Below are positions 35,075-57,118 of a DNA stretch of 58,868 bases, piece by piece. The notes below the pieces were generated by a model. The model ran no database searches. It was not told the DNA's origin and saw only the letters and a program-made list of their open reading frames with translations. The translations under genes and the position numbers were made by a program. The stretch spans positions 1,522,673-1,581,540 of the forward strand of contig NW_004797276.1 in the NCBI RefSeq assembly GCF_000002075.1. The letters are read 5' to 3'. Positions within the stretch are counted from its first letter, which is position 1. The number at the start of each line of letters is the position of its first letter. This DNA is from Aplysia californica (Eukaryota).

Positions 35075-38000
35075 TCAAACTCGACTTAAGTTTGTTGTGC
35101 TGTAGATGTGTTCTTCAGAATTGTCATGAGCACGTGGGGTGGAGGCCTTGCCTTGAATTCTGTACGATGAAACTGATGATGCATTGGCATATGTGTTATC
35201 ATCATCATCTGCTTCCAAGATTTCTCCAAGCTTCCGAGCAACGGAGGCAATGGAGGGCCGAACTTCATTCTCTAGTGACCAACATGTCCGTAGCAAGTCG
35301 TAACTGTGGACAGATATTTGAATGCATTTCAAGTTTTTCATTGTTAGAATACTATGTACAAAGAAGTATGGGAAGGTAGGGGAATTCCACACCCCCACTT
35401 ACAGCCCTTAGAACCAACAGAAATCTGTTTGACATTCAGCTTTTATCATTTGCTTCTGTCTGCCATGTTTTATTTTTCAATTTAGCTTTAATTTCTCATA
35501 TGTCTGTCTTTTTATTTTCATTTTGGCATGTGTGCTCATGTGGGTGTGGAATTGCCCCACAATATTACATTTTTAATTAATTTGAAAAATGAAAGTATGG
35601 GGATGCTGATATTGTAGAATTCATATTATGTTTTGTTTCCTAACTTATCAGACCAAAAGTAAAACTATTGGGGAGGATGTGTCCTCTTTCTACATAAAGT
35701 AACATCGATAACACTTGTCTCACAATCCAATTGAAAAGTATGGTGTGGAATTCCCAGATAATTATAAGTTGCCTAGTTAAAACAATTCAACAAACATACC
35801 GGGTAGCAAAAATAGTATTTGCAAACCTCCCTAAAGTTGTTGGCAACTTTCATTTTAAAAACCTTGAAGTATATTAAGATAATGCAAAAGTGTTAAGGAA
35901 AATTAAGTGAATCTCCAAAAACCAAAGGGCACTCTACTCTGATATGCCGTAAAACCTCCACTAAAACAAAACAAAAAATATGAAGATGGCTTCCAATAAA
36001 AGTTTAGAAATACTTTTCGAGCCTTTGAAAAATAATGAGAAAAAAGAAAAGAAAAGAAAAAATACCTGTGAATCATTACAGCCTAACATCACTATTCTAT
36101 TGAACATGACGGAATGTGTGTTTTACTTACACATCATTAGAAAGAGTCTCAGGCTTTCCAAGGATGTAGCCCTGTAGAATATACTCTCTGACATCATCAG
36201 CTTCTGTCACCTCATGGAATGGTAAACACCCACGCGTCAGAAGTTCCCACACCAGGACAGCAAATGACCACTGAGGAGAGAATTCACACACTTCATGAGT
36301 TTCTTGGAACAGTATGAGTACCATGGAAGTTTATCTGGAAGAAAATACAGCATTACTATTGCAATGGCTTGTTCTACCTTCTGGCTGTAATCCTTTGAGC
36401 TCTTAAAAATTTGTCATTCATGCCTACAGCGTCTGAGCATCTGAGCCTCCTTAGATTTGACTGCTAGAACTAGATTTGCACACTACAACAAATTGTCGCC
36501 TATCTTTAGAACGGAGAAAGGTAGTAATCAGTAGTAAAGGTGAATTATTACACTTGCACTCACTACTCACTGGGCAACGTTTAAACACCATCTGAGTTAT
36601 CTTATCTCGGACATTAGATGAAAAGAATGCCATGGCTTTATATAACAACAGAAAAGACACTGAACATACAAATACAAGTTCAGTGTGAGGGACAGAAATG
36701 TCTGCATGAATGGCGTTGGAGAATGAAATCATCATCTTCCTGAAGCATAGGTTCTGACGCTTAAATTAGTTACACTTCACTGTTTGCTGTGTCTTTCTAC
36801 TCCAGCTCAACAGAGAAAGGAAATCAAAACACTGCTCTACCAAACCATGTTTGGGATTGTACACTGAAGTCACGGATCACTAAAACCTACCAATTGTATG
36901 GAAAATAGGAGATACTAAGCATGAATGAGTTCAAATAACACACTGTGGTATGAAGGGACAGATAATGCAGTTCTTTGAGAGCGTGTCCAGAGATATGTTC
37001 TACTCTCACAGAGTTATAGGTATCATCTTAAAGCTTGCTGATTTATCATGCTTTTGTTGAAAAAAGTACCCATCTATCTTCAATAGAAGTCAAGATATTC
37101 GCGATTGAAGGAAGTGGGGGTGGGGAAGGAGGGGTGTCACCTGGTTTTAGAGGTAAAATTAGCGAGAAAATGGTCGCCAAAGTTTGGCGACTTCCATAGC
37201 TTGAGAGTCCTTGTAAATGGAAAATTTACATTTTTTGTGTGCCAATGTATTTCAGTAAAAGCCGCATGTAAATGTGTTTTTAAGTGGGCATAAAAAGTTT
37301 TGAGTTAAAAACAAAAATTTGAGAAAAATTACGATATCTTCGATTTAATTTCATTATTATTTTATCGAGCGCCTGATTTCACCACGATGCTTCACATTTC
37401 TTGTTGCTATTTGCACTAGCCATAATAAATTTTACAATTGGAGAAAAAAAAAAGTGATAATACAGACTCCTGTCACCCCTTCTGGTAGCTGTCTATTTGT
37501 TCTGTCATTGTACATAAGACTTGAGACCTACCATGGAAGGCTGTACATTCTATAAACAACAACAATAAAACAAAAACAAAATACAGCCATTCAGCTTACC
37601 ACATCTGTTCTGCTGTCATAGTAACCATCACTGATGCTCTCTGGAGCCATCCATCGCAAGGGCAAATAGCGTTCTCTCTGATCATCATAGACATATTCAT
37701 CAGGGTAAAAGTCCCAGGAGAACGCTGCATCACCCAGCTTCACAACAGAAACGTCATCCAAGCTGAAATAATACCAAACACAAATTGATAAGTTCCAACT
37801 AGAAATAGTCATTGATATTTAGGGGAAAGTCATCTGTTCTAATACTGTAATACCATTAGCTTAAAGTTTCAATTTCAGCAAAACAAGCAGACACCAGTGA
37901 AAATCACATAAGACTGTGCGGTATCATGGTGAAATCAGGCACTCATCAAAATAATGAAATCGGAGAACCTGAATTTTTATTCTGCCCATGTAGCAATTTT

Positions 38001-56611: not shown

Positions 56612-57118
56612 AGTTGATTAATCAAACAAGCCGTATATATCTCACCAGTTGCCGCATACAGCCCTAAGCCAGAAGACCAGACTGAACACATCTCCAACAG
56701 GGTCTTTCCTCTTCACAAAGCAGGCTGCTAGTCCATCCGCACTGCCGTTGATGGCCAGCGTCTTGTCGCTGTTGTGGCGAGCGAGCGTCGAAGGTGGCGA
56801 GGTGGGCGTCTTGTCCACAACCTGACAACCCTCATGATCATCCGCCGGTTCCCAGTCTCCAAGCGGGTACTCCACAGCGGGGAAGCCTCCACGGCCGTTA
56901 CAGGATACGACCTCGGAGCAGAATCCGTCCTTGTCACATGACGATGTGTTGAGAGTGCTTCGACAAGCCAGCTCATCCTGACAGAACTGGGAGACGTTGA
57001 TGGAAGCCCGTGTGATCAGTTCTACCTCGCCATTCGACACCGGCGTGAAGGAGCTGCCACAAGGTGTGGAGTACAGAAGTAAAGAACAAAGCAGCACAAA
57101 TAGAATCCTCAAATACAT
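35075..57118 (-). CDS. Usherin-like/laminin-EGF/IPT receptor tyrosine (pseudo)kinase, MET/RON-related; multi-exon, about 1,400 aa
   Basis: 23 phase-consistent GT-AG exons (5'->3'): 57118-56646, 55245-55110, [missing exon, probably in gap 53816-54802], 53490-53424, 52824-52566, 51954-51827, 50932-50801, 49543-49339, 48392-48250, 47844-47651, 47321-47155, 46363-46221, 44593-44411, 44083-43981, 42542-42324, 41625-41476, 41025-40782, 40501-40274, 39905-39810, 39514-39336, 38732-38623, 37762-37600, 36270-36131, 35303-35075 (4091 nt found). Signal peptide [22 protein letters not shown]; [23 protein letters not shown]; TK motifs [34 protein letters not shown]...RP. Confidence 0.9.
37000..37397. mobile_element. 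Dispersed ~400-bp TIR repeat family B (TIR TGTGAGGCATCGTGGTGAAATCAGG)
   Basis: Ends CCTGATTTCACCACGATGCTTCACA. Related copies at about 13467-13870, 19241-19504 plus 20560-20660, 37915-38340 and 48067-48230. Confidence 0.65.
37915..38340. mobile_element. Repeat family B copy (opposite orientation to 37000-37397)
   Basis: TGTGCGGTATCATGGTGAAATCAGG ... CACCTGATTTCAC; internal sequence is reverse-complementary to the 37000-37397 copy. Confidence 0.6.
40782..46363 (-). CDS. Receptor exons 11-16: three IPT/TIG domains, transmembrane helix, juxtamembrane start
   Basis: [25 protein letters not shown]; FSFRPNPVV...[22 protein letters not shown]; ICGTP...FDG...VVDDPVF...ISLSGKRL...[10 protein letters not shown]...IECSPP...ISIGN...VGTVEY. 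These are typical MET/RON/plexin IPT signatures, followed by the hydrophobic TM and [11 protein letters not shown]. Confidence 0.88.
42703..43726 (-). mobile_element. TTAA MITE family A copy 2 (inverted relative to copy 1)
   Basis: TTAA-CTCATTCGCTACG ... CAGTGAATGAG-TTAA. Internal sequence is the diverged reverse complement of 19509-20555 along its length. Confidence 0.85.
47155..49543 (-). CDS. Receptor exons 7-10: four complete plus one truncated laminin-type EGF (LE) repeats
   Basis: [10 protein letters not shown]...CDC...[12 protein letters not shown]...C; CQCNLDG...C...[24 protein letters not shown]...GC; CACNLTG...[24 protein letters not shown]...GC; CNCNTSG...[24 protein letters not shown]...GC; then CKCHEVG...C...GQCPC...RIC, which has only 6 Cys. 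Confidence 0.92.
49200..49283 (-). mobile_element. Degenerate tRNA-derived SINE head
   Basis: Minus strand GGGGCTCTCGTGGTCTAGAGG (A-box) ... GGGTTCAAAG (B-box-like); no cloverleaf 3' end. Confidence 0.45.
50801..57118 (-). CDS. Receptor exons 1-6: signal peptide plus usherin-like N-terminal LamG-like and laminin N-terminal (LN) region
   Basis: [28 protein letters not shown]...[32 protein letters not shown]...CRCLNEYP...FC...RFN...[12 protein letters not shown]...[20 protein letters not shown], and [11 protein letters not shown]|C. These parallel the recalled USH2A N-terminus (FTLAVWLK...WIHLSVQV...DFRLYQVALTNREI...CRCPGSHP...VNDNDVGTSWVS...VTISVDL) and the canonical LN end 'GRC'. Confidence 0.75.
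56270..56607. repeat. (CA)n microsatellite spanning a gap, intron 1 of the receptor gene
   Basis: Direct observation; N 56429-56528. Confidence 0.95.

What the first reader, a model, noticed from the sequence alone, without database searches (positions are those of the whole stretch)
35075..57118. Chimeric receptor: usherin/laminin-type ectodomain fused to a MET-type IPT-TM-tyrosine kinase module
Seen in sequence: one phase-consistent spliced ORF with signal peptide, LamG-like plus LN region, 4.5 LE repeats, 3 IPT, TM and TK domain. Established knowledge: IPT plus TK is the MET/RON/SEA signature, but those receptors carry a Sema plus PSI head. LamG-like+LN+LE is the USH2A (usherin) head, normally followed by LamG/FN3 arrays and no kinase. 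LN+LE modules are otherwise found in laminins and netrins, which are ligands or matrix. I do not recognise this combination among the classical RTK families. Inference: an undescribed invertebrate receptor class that may couple matrix, adhesion or netrin-like binding to RTK-type signalling rather than binding HGF. Pipelines would probably mislabel it 'HGF receptor-like', 'usherin-like' or 'laminin-like'.
Basis: partly seen in the sequence, partly recalled or inferred. Interest (0 to 1): 0.92.

Follow-up and report, generated by a model that had tools for sequence, protein, structure and literature searches.

The report
Mollusc usherin-MET hybrid pseudokinase receptor
This sea-hare gene encodes an apparently undescribed snail-and-clam cell-surface receptor built from the front end of the deaf-blindness protein usherin and the back end of a MET-type growth-factor receptor; its kinase looks disabled, so it probably signals as a docking platform rather than as an enzyme.

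Summary
The chimera is real. On the minus strand, 23 GT-AG exons encode signal peptide, LamG-like/LN head, 4.5 LE, 3 IPT, TM and a tyrosine-kinase fold. The frame breaks once, across gap 53816-54803. A short phase 0-to-1 exon must lie there, as in the Mytilus orthologue and this genome's usherin gene; I did not fill it. RNA contigs from two studies splice the LE exons directly onto the IPT exons. Orthologues with the same layout occur across gastropods and bivalves and form one clade (100/100). Pipelines label them HGFR-, usherin-, RYK-, ROR- or TXK-like. The genome keeps separate USH2A and Sema-MET genes. Head introns match USH2A and all six kinase introns match MET, which records exon shuffling. 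The kinase is probably a pseudokinase: glycine loop and DFG are lost and the gatekeeper is Tyr in all 22 aligned members, while a MET-type tail YxN motif is kept in 23 of 24. Best model: a matrix or adhesion co-receptor, phosphorylated in trans, that docks Grb2-type adaptors. Ligand, activity, RYK relationship and range outside molluscs are untested. No paper describing it was found. The scan's related notes are on this same window only.

The parts
56646..57118 (-). Exon 1: signal peptide, N-terminal segment of the LN fold, start of the inserted LamG-like domain (aa 1-158)
   Evidence: orthologue alignment; fold ranges
55110..55245 (-). Exon 2: LamG-like strands; ends in phase 0
   Evidence: matching intron in Mytilus gene
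53816..54803 (-). Assembly gap inferred to hide one coding exon (phase 0 in, phase 1 out, about 34-36 aa of the LamG-like domain); not filled
   Evidence: frame break; size; matching exon in USH2A and Mytilus
53424..53490 (-). Exon 3: last strand of the LamG-like domain (phase 1 in, 2 out)
   Evidence: 64-nt 1-to-2 counterpart in USH2A
52566..52824 (-). Exon 4: LN domain resumes
   Evidence: same boundaries and phases in USH2A
51827..51954 (-). Exon 5: LN domain
50801..50932 (-). Exon 6: end of LN domain
49339..49543 (-). Exon 7: LE1 and start of LE2
   Evidence: Pfam; RNA contigs
48250..48392 (-). Exon 8: LE2-LE3
47651..47844 (-). Exon 9: LE3-LE4
47155..47321 (-). Exon 10: LE4 and half LE5; ends at the phase-0 fusion seam
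   Evidence: same intron in Mytilus
46221..46363 (-). Exon 11: start of IPT1, first MET-type exon
   Evidence: TIG E 6.5e-6; spliced to exon 10 in RNA contigs of three runs
44411..44593 (-). Exon 12: IPT1 to IPT2
43981..44083 (-). Exon 13: IPT2
42324..42542 (-). Exon 14: IPT2 to IPT3
41476..41625 (-). Exon 15: IPT3
   Evidence: weak TIG
40782..41025 (-). Exon 16: end of IPT3, transmembrane helix, Cys-rich/basic stop-transfer, juxtamembrane tyrosine (about Y980)
40274..40501 (-). Exon 17: juxtamembrane region and start of the degenerate glycine loop
39810..39905 (-). Exon 18: degenerate glycine loop and beta3 lysine (K1082)
   Evidence: intron phases equal MET
39336..39514 (-). Exon 19: alphaC glutamate, tyrosine gatekeeper (Y1133), hinge
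38623..38732 (-). Exon 20: catalytic loop, HKD instead of HRD
37600..37762 (-). Exon 21: DAA instead of DFG, activation loop with the invariant Y1234-equivalent
36131..36270 (-). Exon 22: kinase C-lobe
35075..35303 (-). Exon 23: end of kinase, tail YxN motif (Y1326), C-terminal S-x-V, stop

Best explanation
A single-copy, mollusc-conserved type I receptor. It arose when the 5' exons of a duplicated usherin (USH2A) gene (LN with inserted LamG-like domain, plus LE rods) were joined at a phase-0 intron to the IPT-IPT-IPT-TM-kinase half of a MET-type receptor. This origin is well supported. The most likely working mode is inferred. The LN/LamG-like tip, held out on an LE + IPT stalk, binds a matrix, adhesion or glycan partner instead of HGF. 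The intracellular domain has a stable MET-like fold but little or no ATP turnover. When clustered with an active tyrosine kinase (the canonical Sema-MET in the same genome is the obvious candidate; a Src-type kinase is another), its tail YxN and activation-loop tyrosine are phosphorylated in trans. It then recruits Grb2-type SH2 adaptors and acts as a HER3/RYK-like co-receptor and scaffold toward Ras-MAPK or motility signalling.
For: Shown: one spliced transcript across the seam in two studies. Intronless full-length ORFs of orthologues on two assembled-read contigs. Same architecture in gastropods and bivalves. Monophyly 100/100 with an internal tree that follows mollusc phylogeny. Head aligns to USH2A (probability 100, E 8.8e-55) and shares its intron positions and phases. 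Six of six kinase introns match the genome's own Sema-MET gene; ROS-, InsR-, Eph- and DDR-like loci look different (qualitative). Kinase best matches MET by sequence and fold and sits in a MET-type clade at 100/99. Impairment signs in 22 aligned members: DFG is DAS/DAA/DSS in all; first and third glycine-loop glycines are lost in all that cover them; gatekeeper Tyr in 22/22; solvent-front Gly replaced in 20/22; HKD in 17/22. The inactive RTKs PTK7, ROR1/2 and RYK share HKD, an altered glycine loop and an altered DFG, and signal through trans-phosphorylated docking sites (PMC13259870). In MET the glycine-loop glycines do not tolerate substitution (PMC11398868). The tail YxN aligns with MET's docking tyrosine and is kept in 23/24. 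The kinase is the most conserved region versus close orthologues (71% vs 35-49% for the ectodomain against Elysia), so it is under selection.
Against: The beta3 Lys, alphaC Glu, catalytic Asp and Asn, and the Asp of DFG are invariant, and so is the activation-loop Tyr. By the strict K/D/D rule it is not a pseudokinase. No activity, ligand, partner or tissue data exist. The C-terminal part of the LN domain is about 50 residues shorter than in USH2A (153 vs 204), so laminin-type binding may be lost. RYK was not in the trees. That YxN binds Grb2 is established knowledge for MET, not tested here.
Confidence: 0.62

Rival explanations
1. Same chimeric receptor, but the kinase is an atypical active enzyme (low rate or ligand-gated). 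The invariant Phe two places after the DFG position and other changes rebuild the active site, and it autophosphorylates its own YxN tail.
For: K, E, D, N and the Mg-binding D are invariant in 22/22; the activation-loop Tyr is invariant; Phe at DFG+1 in 22/22; HRD is intact in 5 members; confident kinase fold, pLDDT above 90 over most of the domain.
Against: Two glycine-loop glycines lost, Tyr gatekeeper, bulky solvent-front residue and loss of DFG Phe and Gly together. RYK keeps the same K/E/D/N/D set and has an occluded ATP site.
Confidence: 0.24
2. The architecture and pseudokinase reading hold, but the kinase descends from the RYK lineage, or from an older IPT-bearing pseudokinase lineage shared with RYK, rather than from a MET duplicate.
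For: HKD plus a D-small-small motif resemble RYK. The family lies beside, not inside, the canonical MET clade; nesting with mollusc MET is rejected (p-AU 0.0135). Its sister row P0291 has HKD and DNA motifs with IPT domains. RYK 6tua scores near MET in the fold search.
Against: Three IPT domains and the TM position are MET-type and absent from RYK. Six of six kinase introns match MET. MET ranks first by sequence and fold, 30-33% identity vs 26% for RYK. Long branches may pull the family out of MET.
Confidence: 0.12
3. Two neighbouring genes (a short usherin-like gene and a MET fragment), or a misassembly, read as one.
For: Four assembly gaps inside the locus and one frame break.
Against: RNA contigs from two studies of this organism, and a third run, join exon 10 to exon 11 with no letters between. 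Full-length orthologues in many species, including a chromosome-scale Mytilus locus with the same intron series.
Confidence: 0.02

Closest known systems
MET/RON (HGF and MSP receptors), including mollusc Sema-MET
   Same: IPT stalk, single TM, kinase sequence and fold, kinase intron positions and phases, tail YxN aligned to the MET docking tyrosine, first activation-loop tyrosine.
   Different: No Sema or PSI; three IPT instead of four; usherin head; glycine loop, HRD and DFG degenerate; second activation-loop tyrosine absent. A canonical MET exists separately in this genome (contig C519) and in Mytilus.
USH2A / usherin
   Same: LN fold with an inserted LamG-like domain, LE rods, collinear profile alignment and shared intron positions and phases.
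   Different: Only 4.5 LE; LN about 50 residues shorter; no LamG or FN3 arrays; ends in IPT-TM-kinase. The intact USH2A gene lies elsewhere (contig C466).
Met-LP receptors (PMC6374515)
   Same: Lophotrochozoan MET-type kinase with a swapped ectodomain; shows that head exchange on this kinase has happened before.
   Different: Met-LP carries a full plexin ectodomain with Sema and PSI; this family has none. That survey was based on Sema domains and has no mention of laminin.
Receptor tyrosine pseudokinases RYK, PTK7, ROR1/2, HER3
   Same: HKD catalytic loop, altered glycine loop and DFG, retained docking tyrosines; likely the same scaffold or co-receptor mode.
   Different: Different ectodomain (no WIF, Ig, CRD or kringle); MET-type tail; inactivity not yet measured.
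Laminins and netrins
   Same: LN-LE fold; best structural matches of the head (laminin beta1 and alpha5, netrin-1, netrin-4).
   Different: Those are secreted or GPI-anchored ligands and matrix proteins, with no inserted LamG-like domain, IPT, TM or kinase.

Membership tests
MET/RON family | N-terminal Sema domain | tested here: not met
   No Sema in any full-length orthologue scanned; the genome's Sema hits are elsewhere; head folds as LN/LamG-like
MET/RON family | PSI domain before the IPT array | tested here: not met
   A half LE precedes IPT1; PSI found only in true METs
MET/RON family | IPT array, TM and MET-type kinase | tested here: met
   Three IPT rather than four; kinase best matches MET; MET-type clade 100/99; six shared introns
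MET/RON family | Intact glycine loop, HRD, DFG and tandem activation-loop tyrosines | tested here: not met
MET/RON family | C-terminal YxN docking site | tested here: met
   23 of 24 members, aligned to MET's; binding itself not tested
MET/RON family | Binds HGF/MSP-type ligand | not testable with these tools
   The ligand-binding Sema domain is absent, so unlikely
USH2A / usherin | LamG-like plus LN head followed by LE repeats | tested here: met
USH2A / usherin | About ten LE, then LamG and long FN3 arrays, no kinase | tested here: not met
   4.5 LE then IPT-TM-kinase; true USH2A is a separate locus
Met-LP | Complete plexin ectodomain on a MET-type kinase | tested here: not met
   Definition from PMC6374515; no Sema/PSI here
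RYK/Derailed | WIF ectodomain | tested here: not met
   The only WIF match in the genome is on another contig
RYK/Derailed | Kinase groups with RYK in a tree | not tested
   No RYK kinase sequence could be obtained by reference
Receptor tyrosine pseudokinases | Degenerate glycine loop and DFG, HKD loop | tested here: met
   against Table 2 of PMC13259870
Receptor tyrosine pseudokinases | Loss of beta3 Lys, catalytic Asp or DFG Asp | tested here: not met
   All three invariant; RYK also keeps them
Receptor tyrosine pseudokinases | No measurable phosphotransfer | not testable with these tools
   Needs a biochemical assay

The most novel reading that the evidence does not exclude
A previously undescribed receptor class: to my knowledge the first LN-domain receptor kinase. 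It is a MET-lineage pseudokinase, kept as a single gene since the gastropod-bivalve split, that links usherin-type matrix or adhesion contacts to MET/Grb2 signalling as a HER3-like partner of molluscan MET. It may be one branch of an older protostome lineage of IPT-TM-pseudokinases with exchangeable heads.
Probability: 0.4. Interest if true: 0.82.

Novelty: new variant of a known kind. Interest (0 to 1): 0.68.

Why it matters
From my own knowledge, LN domains occur in secreted or matrix proteins (laminins, netrins) and in usherin, not on a kinase receptor. Here one is fused to a MET-type tail and has been kept as an apparent single gene across snails and clams. The intron record on both sides of a transcript-confirmed seam makes it an unusually clean case of receptor birth by exon shuffling. 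It adds a probable new receptor pseudokinase outside the Wnt, Eph and HER groups, in Aplysia, Lymnaea, Biomphalaria, oysters and mussels, where it can be tested. It may also give a signalling readout for what the usherin head binds. It also explains a set of conflicting database labels that inflate counts of mollusc HGFR, RYK, ROR and usherin genes.

Tried and rejected
The joined spliced protein was built only inside scripts and was not sent to any search or folding tool. Searches were run exon by exon or with orthologues (Biomphalaria, Haliotis, Patella), so the structure models are of an orthologue, not of this protein. No gap letters were filled or looked up. Bridging exons between exons 2 and 3 in read letters: only repeat-derived or very short candidates, rejected. 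Open frames in the intron at 44600-46200 are not exons: RNA contigs skip them. The raw-read run X21 had no depth on the exons, so that sample gives no support; tissue is unknown. Reads were laid only on 43900-49600; exons 1-6 and 14-23 are not directly read-confirmed, though contig lengths fit. Whole-alignment search added only Haliotis members. The Atlas feature search gave no hit at 0.9; NCBIfam gave only generic kinases; Rfam was blank. Fold matches to botulinum/tetanus binding domains, sialidases and CBM32 are generic LamG/jelly-roll matches, not evidence of toxin or lectin function. Ten paper searches found no description of the family, but the library lacks most subscription papers. ApNork and ApLRRTK are FGFR/RET-side receptors, not this gene. 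No complex prediction was run.
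Full report
Source and gene model. The window belongs to a 927,310,431-base assembly of 4,332 contigs. From memory these are the figures of Aplysia californica; the gene's nearest relatives are Elysia and pond snails, and earlier scan notes also name Aplysia. 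On the minus strand I resolved 23 exons from 57118 to 35075, all with GT-AG introns. Exons 3-23 give an uninterrupted 1160-residue frame and exons 1-2 give 203 residues with a hydrophobic N-terminus. Exon-wise Pfam shows laminin EGF, TIG, a TM-type segment and a tyrosine kinase in that order.

The gaps. Exon 2 ends in phase 0 and exon 3 starts in phase 1, and a direct join stops at residue 222. The 988-base gap at 53816-54803 lies between them. Elysia, Biomphalaria and Bulinus have 34-36 extra residues there (three other pairwise alignments placed the indel differently). The Mytilus orthologue has a phase 0-to-1 exon at that spot, and so does this genome's USH2A gene, followed by a 64-nt phase 1-to-2 exon like exon 3. 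A hidden exon is therefore the simplest reading; its letters were not sought. The other three gaps fall in introns that join in phase and have single counterparts in Mytilus.

One transcript. Laid on 43900-49600, a 7,021-nt contig (run X4) and a 6,062-nt contig (run X9, a different study) carry exons 7 to 12 or 13 with consecutive record coordinates and no differences. A short contig of a third run also joins exon 10 to exon 11. These runs are RNA by guess of the index, but the precise intron skipping marks them as spliced. The remaining contig lengths fit the rest of the coding sequence plus about 2.1-2.3 kb of 3' UTR (indirect). Two orthologues occur as intronless full-length ORFs on assembled-read contigs.

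A family. The activation-loop exon retrieved long proteins with the same layout. Named ones come from Biomphalaria, Bulinus, Lymnaea, Physella, Elysia, Haliotis, Patella, Littorina, Nucella, Batillaria, Pomacea, Mytilus, Mizuhopecten, Tegillarca, Pinctada, Saccostrea, Mya, Ruditapes, Mercenaria and Sinanodonta. Their labels include HGF receptor-like, usherin, USH2A-like, RYK-like, TXK-like, ROR-like, IGF1R and uncharacterized. The 22 kinase domains form one clade at 100/100, and its branching follows gastropod and bivalve phylogeny, as expected of orthologues older than that split. The exon has one strong match in this genome. The Mytilus gene shows the same series of intron phases, including the phase-0 LE/IPT seam, lacking only one intron. 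No named member outside gastropods and bivalves was found. One divergent member of unknown origin (L019) falls inside the clade unresolved. The searches were limited, so the range is a lower bound.

Origin of the head. The family profile aligns collinearly with Mytilus USH2A over 493 columns (probability 100, E 8.8e-55). A model of the Biomphalaria head (mean pLDDT 84) matches laminin and netrin LN-LE structures best. The aligned ranges show a LamG/ConA-type sandwich (model 64-253) inserted within the LN fold (about 9-420). The C-terminal LN part is about 150 residues against 204 in USH2A. The genome has an intact USH2A locus on another contig, and its LamG-like, LN and early LE introns match exons 3-8 in place and phase, apart from one extra USH2A intron.

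Origin of the tail. By sequence and by fold the kinase is closest to MET, with RYK lower. The genome has a separate Sema-bearing MET on contig C519 with canonical motifs. All six kinase introns of the window gene match it in position and phase; ROS-, insulin-receptor-, Eph- and DDR-like loci appear to split differently (qualitative). In trees the family lies in a MET-type clade (100/99) but beside canonical METs, and nesting it with mollusc MET is rejected (p-AU 0.0135; long branches weaken this). So the tail is a MET paralogue, possibly an old one. RYK was not available for the tree. Two other IPT-TM-kinase proteins with cysteine-rich heads turned up (Owenia P0102, unidentified P0291), and Met-LP receptors are published (PMC6374515). 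Head swapping on this tail is thus recurrent; the usherin head is the new case.

The kinase. In 22 aligned members DFG reads DAS, DAA or DSS, the first and third glycine-loop glycines are gone, the gatekeeper is always Tyr, the solvent-front Gly is replaced in 20, and HRD is HKD in 17. The beta3 Lys, alphaC Glu, catalytic Asp and Asn, DFG Asp and first activation-loop Tyr are invariant. This is the pattern of the inactive receptors RYK, ROR1/2 and PTK7, which also keep K, E, D and N, have occluded ATP sites and signal through trans-phosphorylated docking sites (PMC13259870). MET does not tolerate glycine-loop substitutions (PMC11398868). The domain is nonetheless the best-conserved part among close orthologues (71% to Elysia vs 35-49% outside) and folds confidently. 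A tail YxN aligned with MET's docking tyrosine is kept in 23 of 24 members; YxN is the Grb2 SH2 motif (established knowledge).

Mechanism. Shown: one expressed chimeric gene, its two parents, its conservation and its motif changes. Inferred: the LN/LamG-like tip binds a matrix, adhesion or glycan partner; the kinase fold is largely inactive; an active kinase such as MET phosphorylates the tail; Grb2-type adaptors relay the signal (0.62). Rivals: an atypical active kinase (0.24), RYK-lineage ancestry (0.12), two genes or artefact (0.02).

Novelty and verdict. It fails the membership tests for MET, Met-LP, usherin and RYK, while probably working like a receptor pseudokinase. Ten literature searches found no description, though the library is incomplete. 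Lineage-specific RTK ectodomains are a known phenomenon, so I class it as a new variant of a known kind: an apparently unnamed mollusc receptor family. Interest 0.68.

Noticed in passing
window 21808-21996 (+) and nearby exons to about 24300: A neighbouring plus-strand gene with a CANIN domain hit (PF14816, E 9e-6), probably SLF2/FAM178A, pointing toward the receptor gene tail to tail.
   Followed up: partly
window about 57650-57757 and 49640-49755: A roughly 110-nt stretch ending in long T and G runs occurs twice, once directly beside gap 57758-57857 (seen); a repeat or a local assembly duplication, outside coding exons.
   Followed up: no
window 49057-49290, 48090-48210, 46880-47060, 45800-45830: Intronic repeats with very high depth in the RNA-type runs; loose ends at 49205-49283 look tRNA-like, suggesting a SINE. 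No Rfam match.
   Followed up: partly
window 35078-35086 (-): The protein ends in S-R-V, a class I PDZ-type ligand, also in Lymnaea, Elysia and one more close relative but not in other members.
   Followed up: partly
G000:C466:175611-175898 and 177545-177832 (L004, L005): One LN exon of the genome's USH2A gene is present twice, nearly identical, about 1.9 kb apart: tandem exon duplication or assembly artefact.
   Followed up: no
P0102 (Owenia fusiformis) and P0291 (L018:3001-6867): Two more MET-type IPT-TM-kinase receptors with other heads: trefoil plus Cys-rich repeat with an intact kinase (Owenia), and Cys-rich repeat plus a long Pro/Thr stalk with HKD/DNA motifs (unidentified; sister to this family in trees, possibly long-branch attraction).
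   Followed up: partly
L019:52-2504: Divergent family member with short introns from an unidentified sequencing run; unresolved at the base of the clade, possibly from outside gastropods and bivalves.
   Followed up: partly
P0160/P0014 (Patella), P0061 (Mya), P0019 (Pinctada): These orthologue models have fewer LE repeats; real variation in stalk length or gene-model errors.
   Followed up: no
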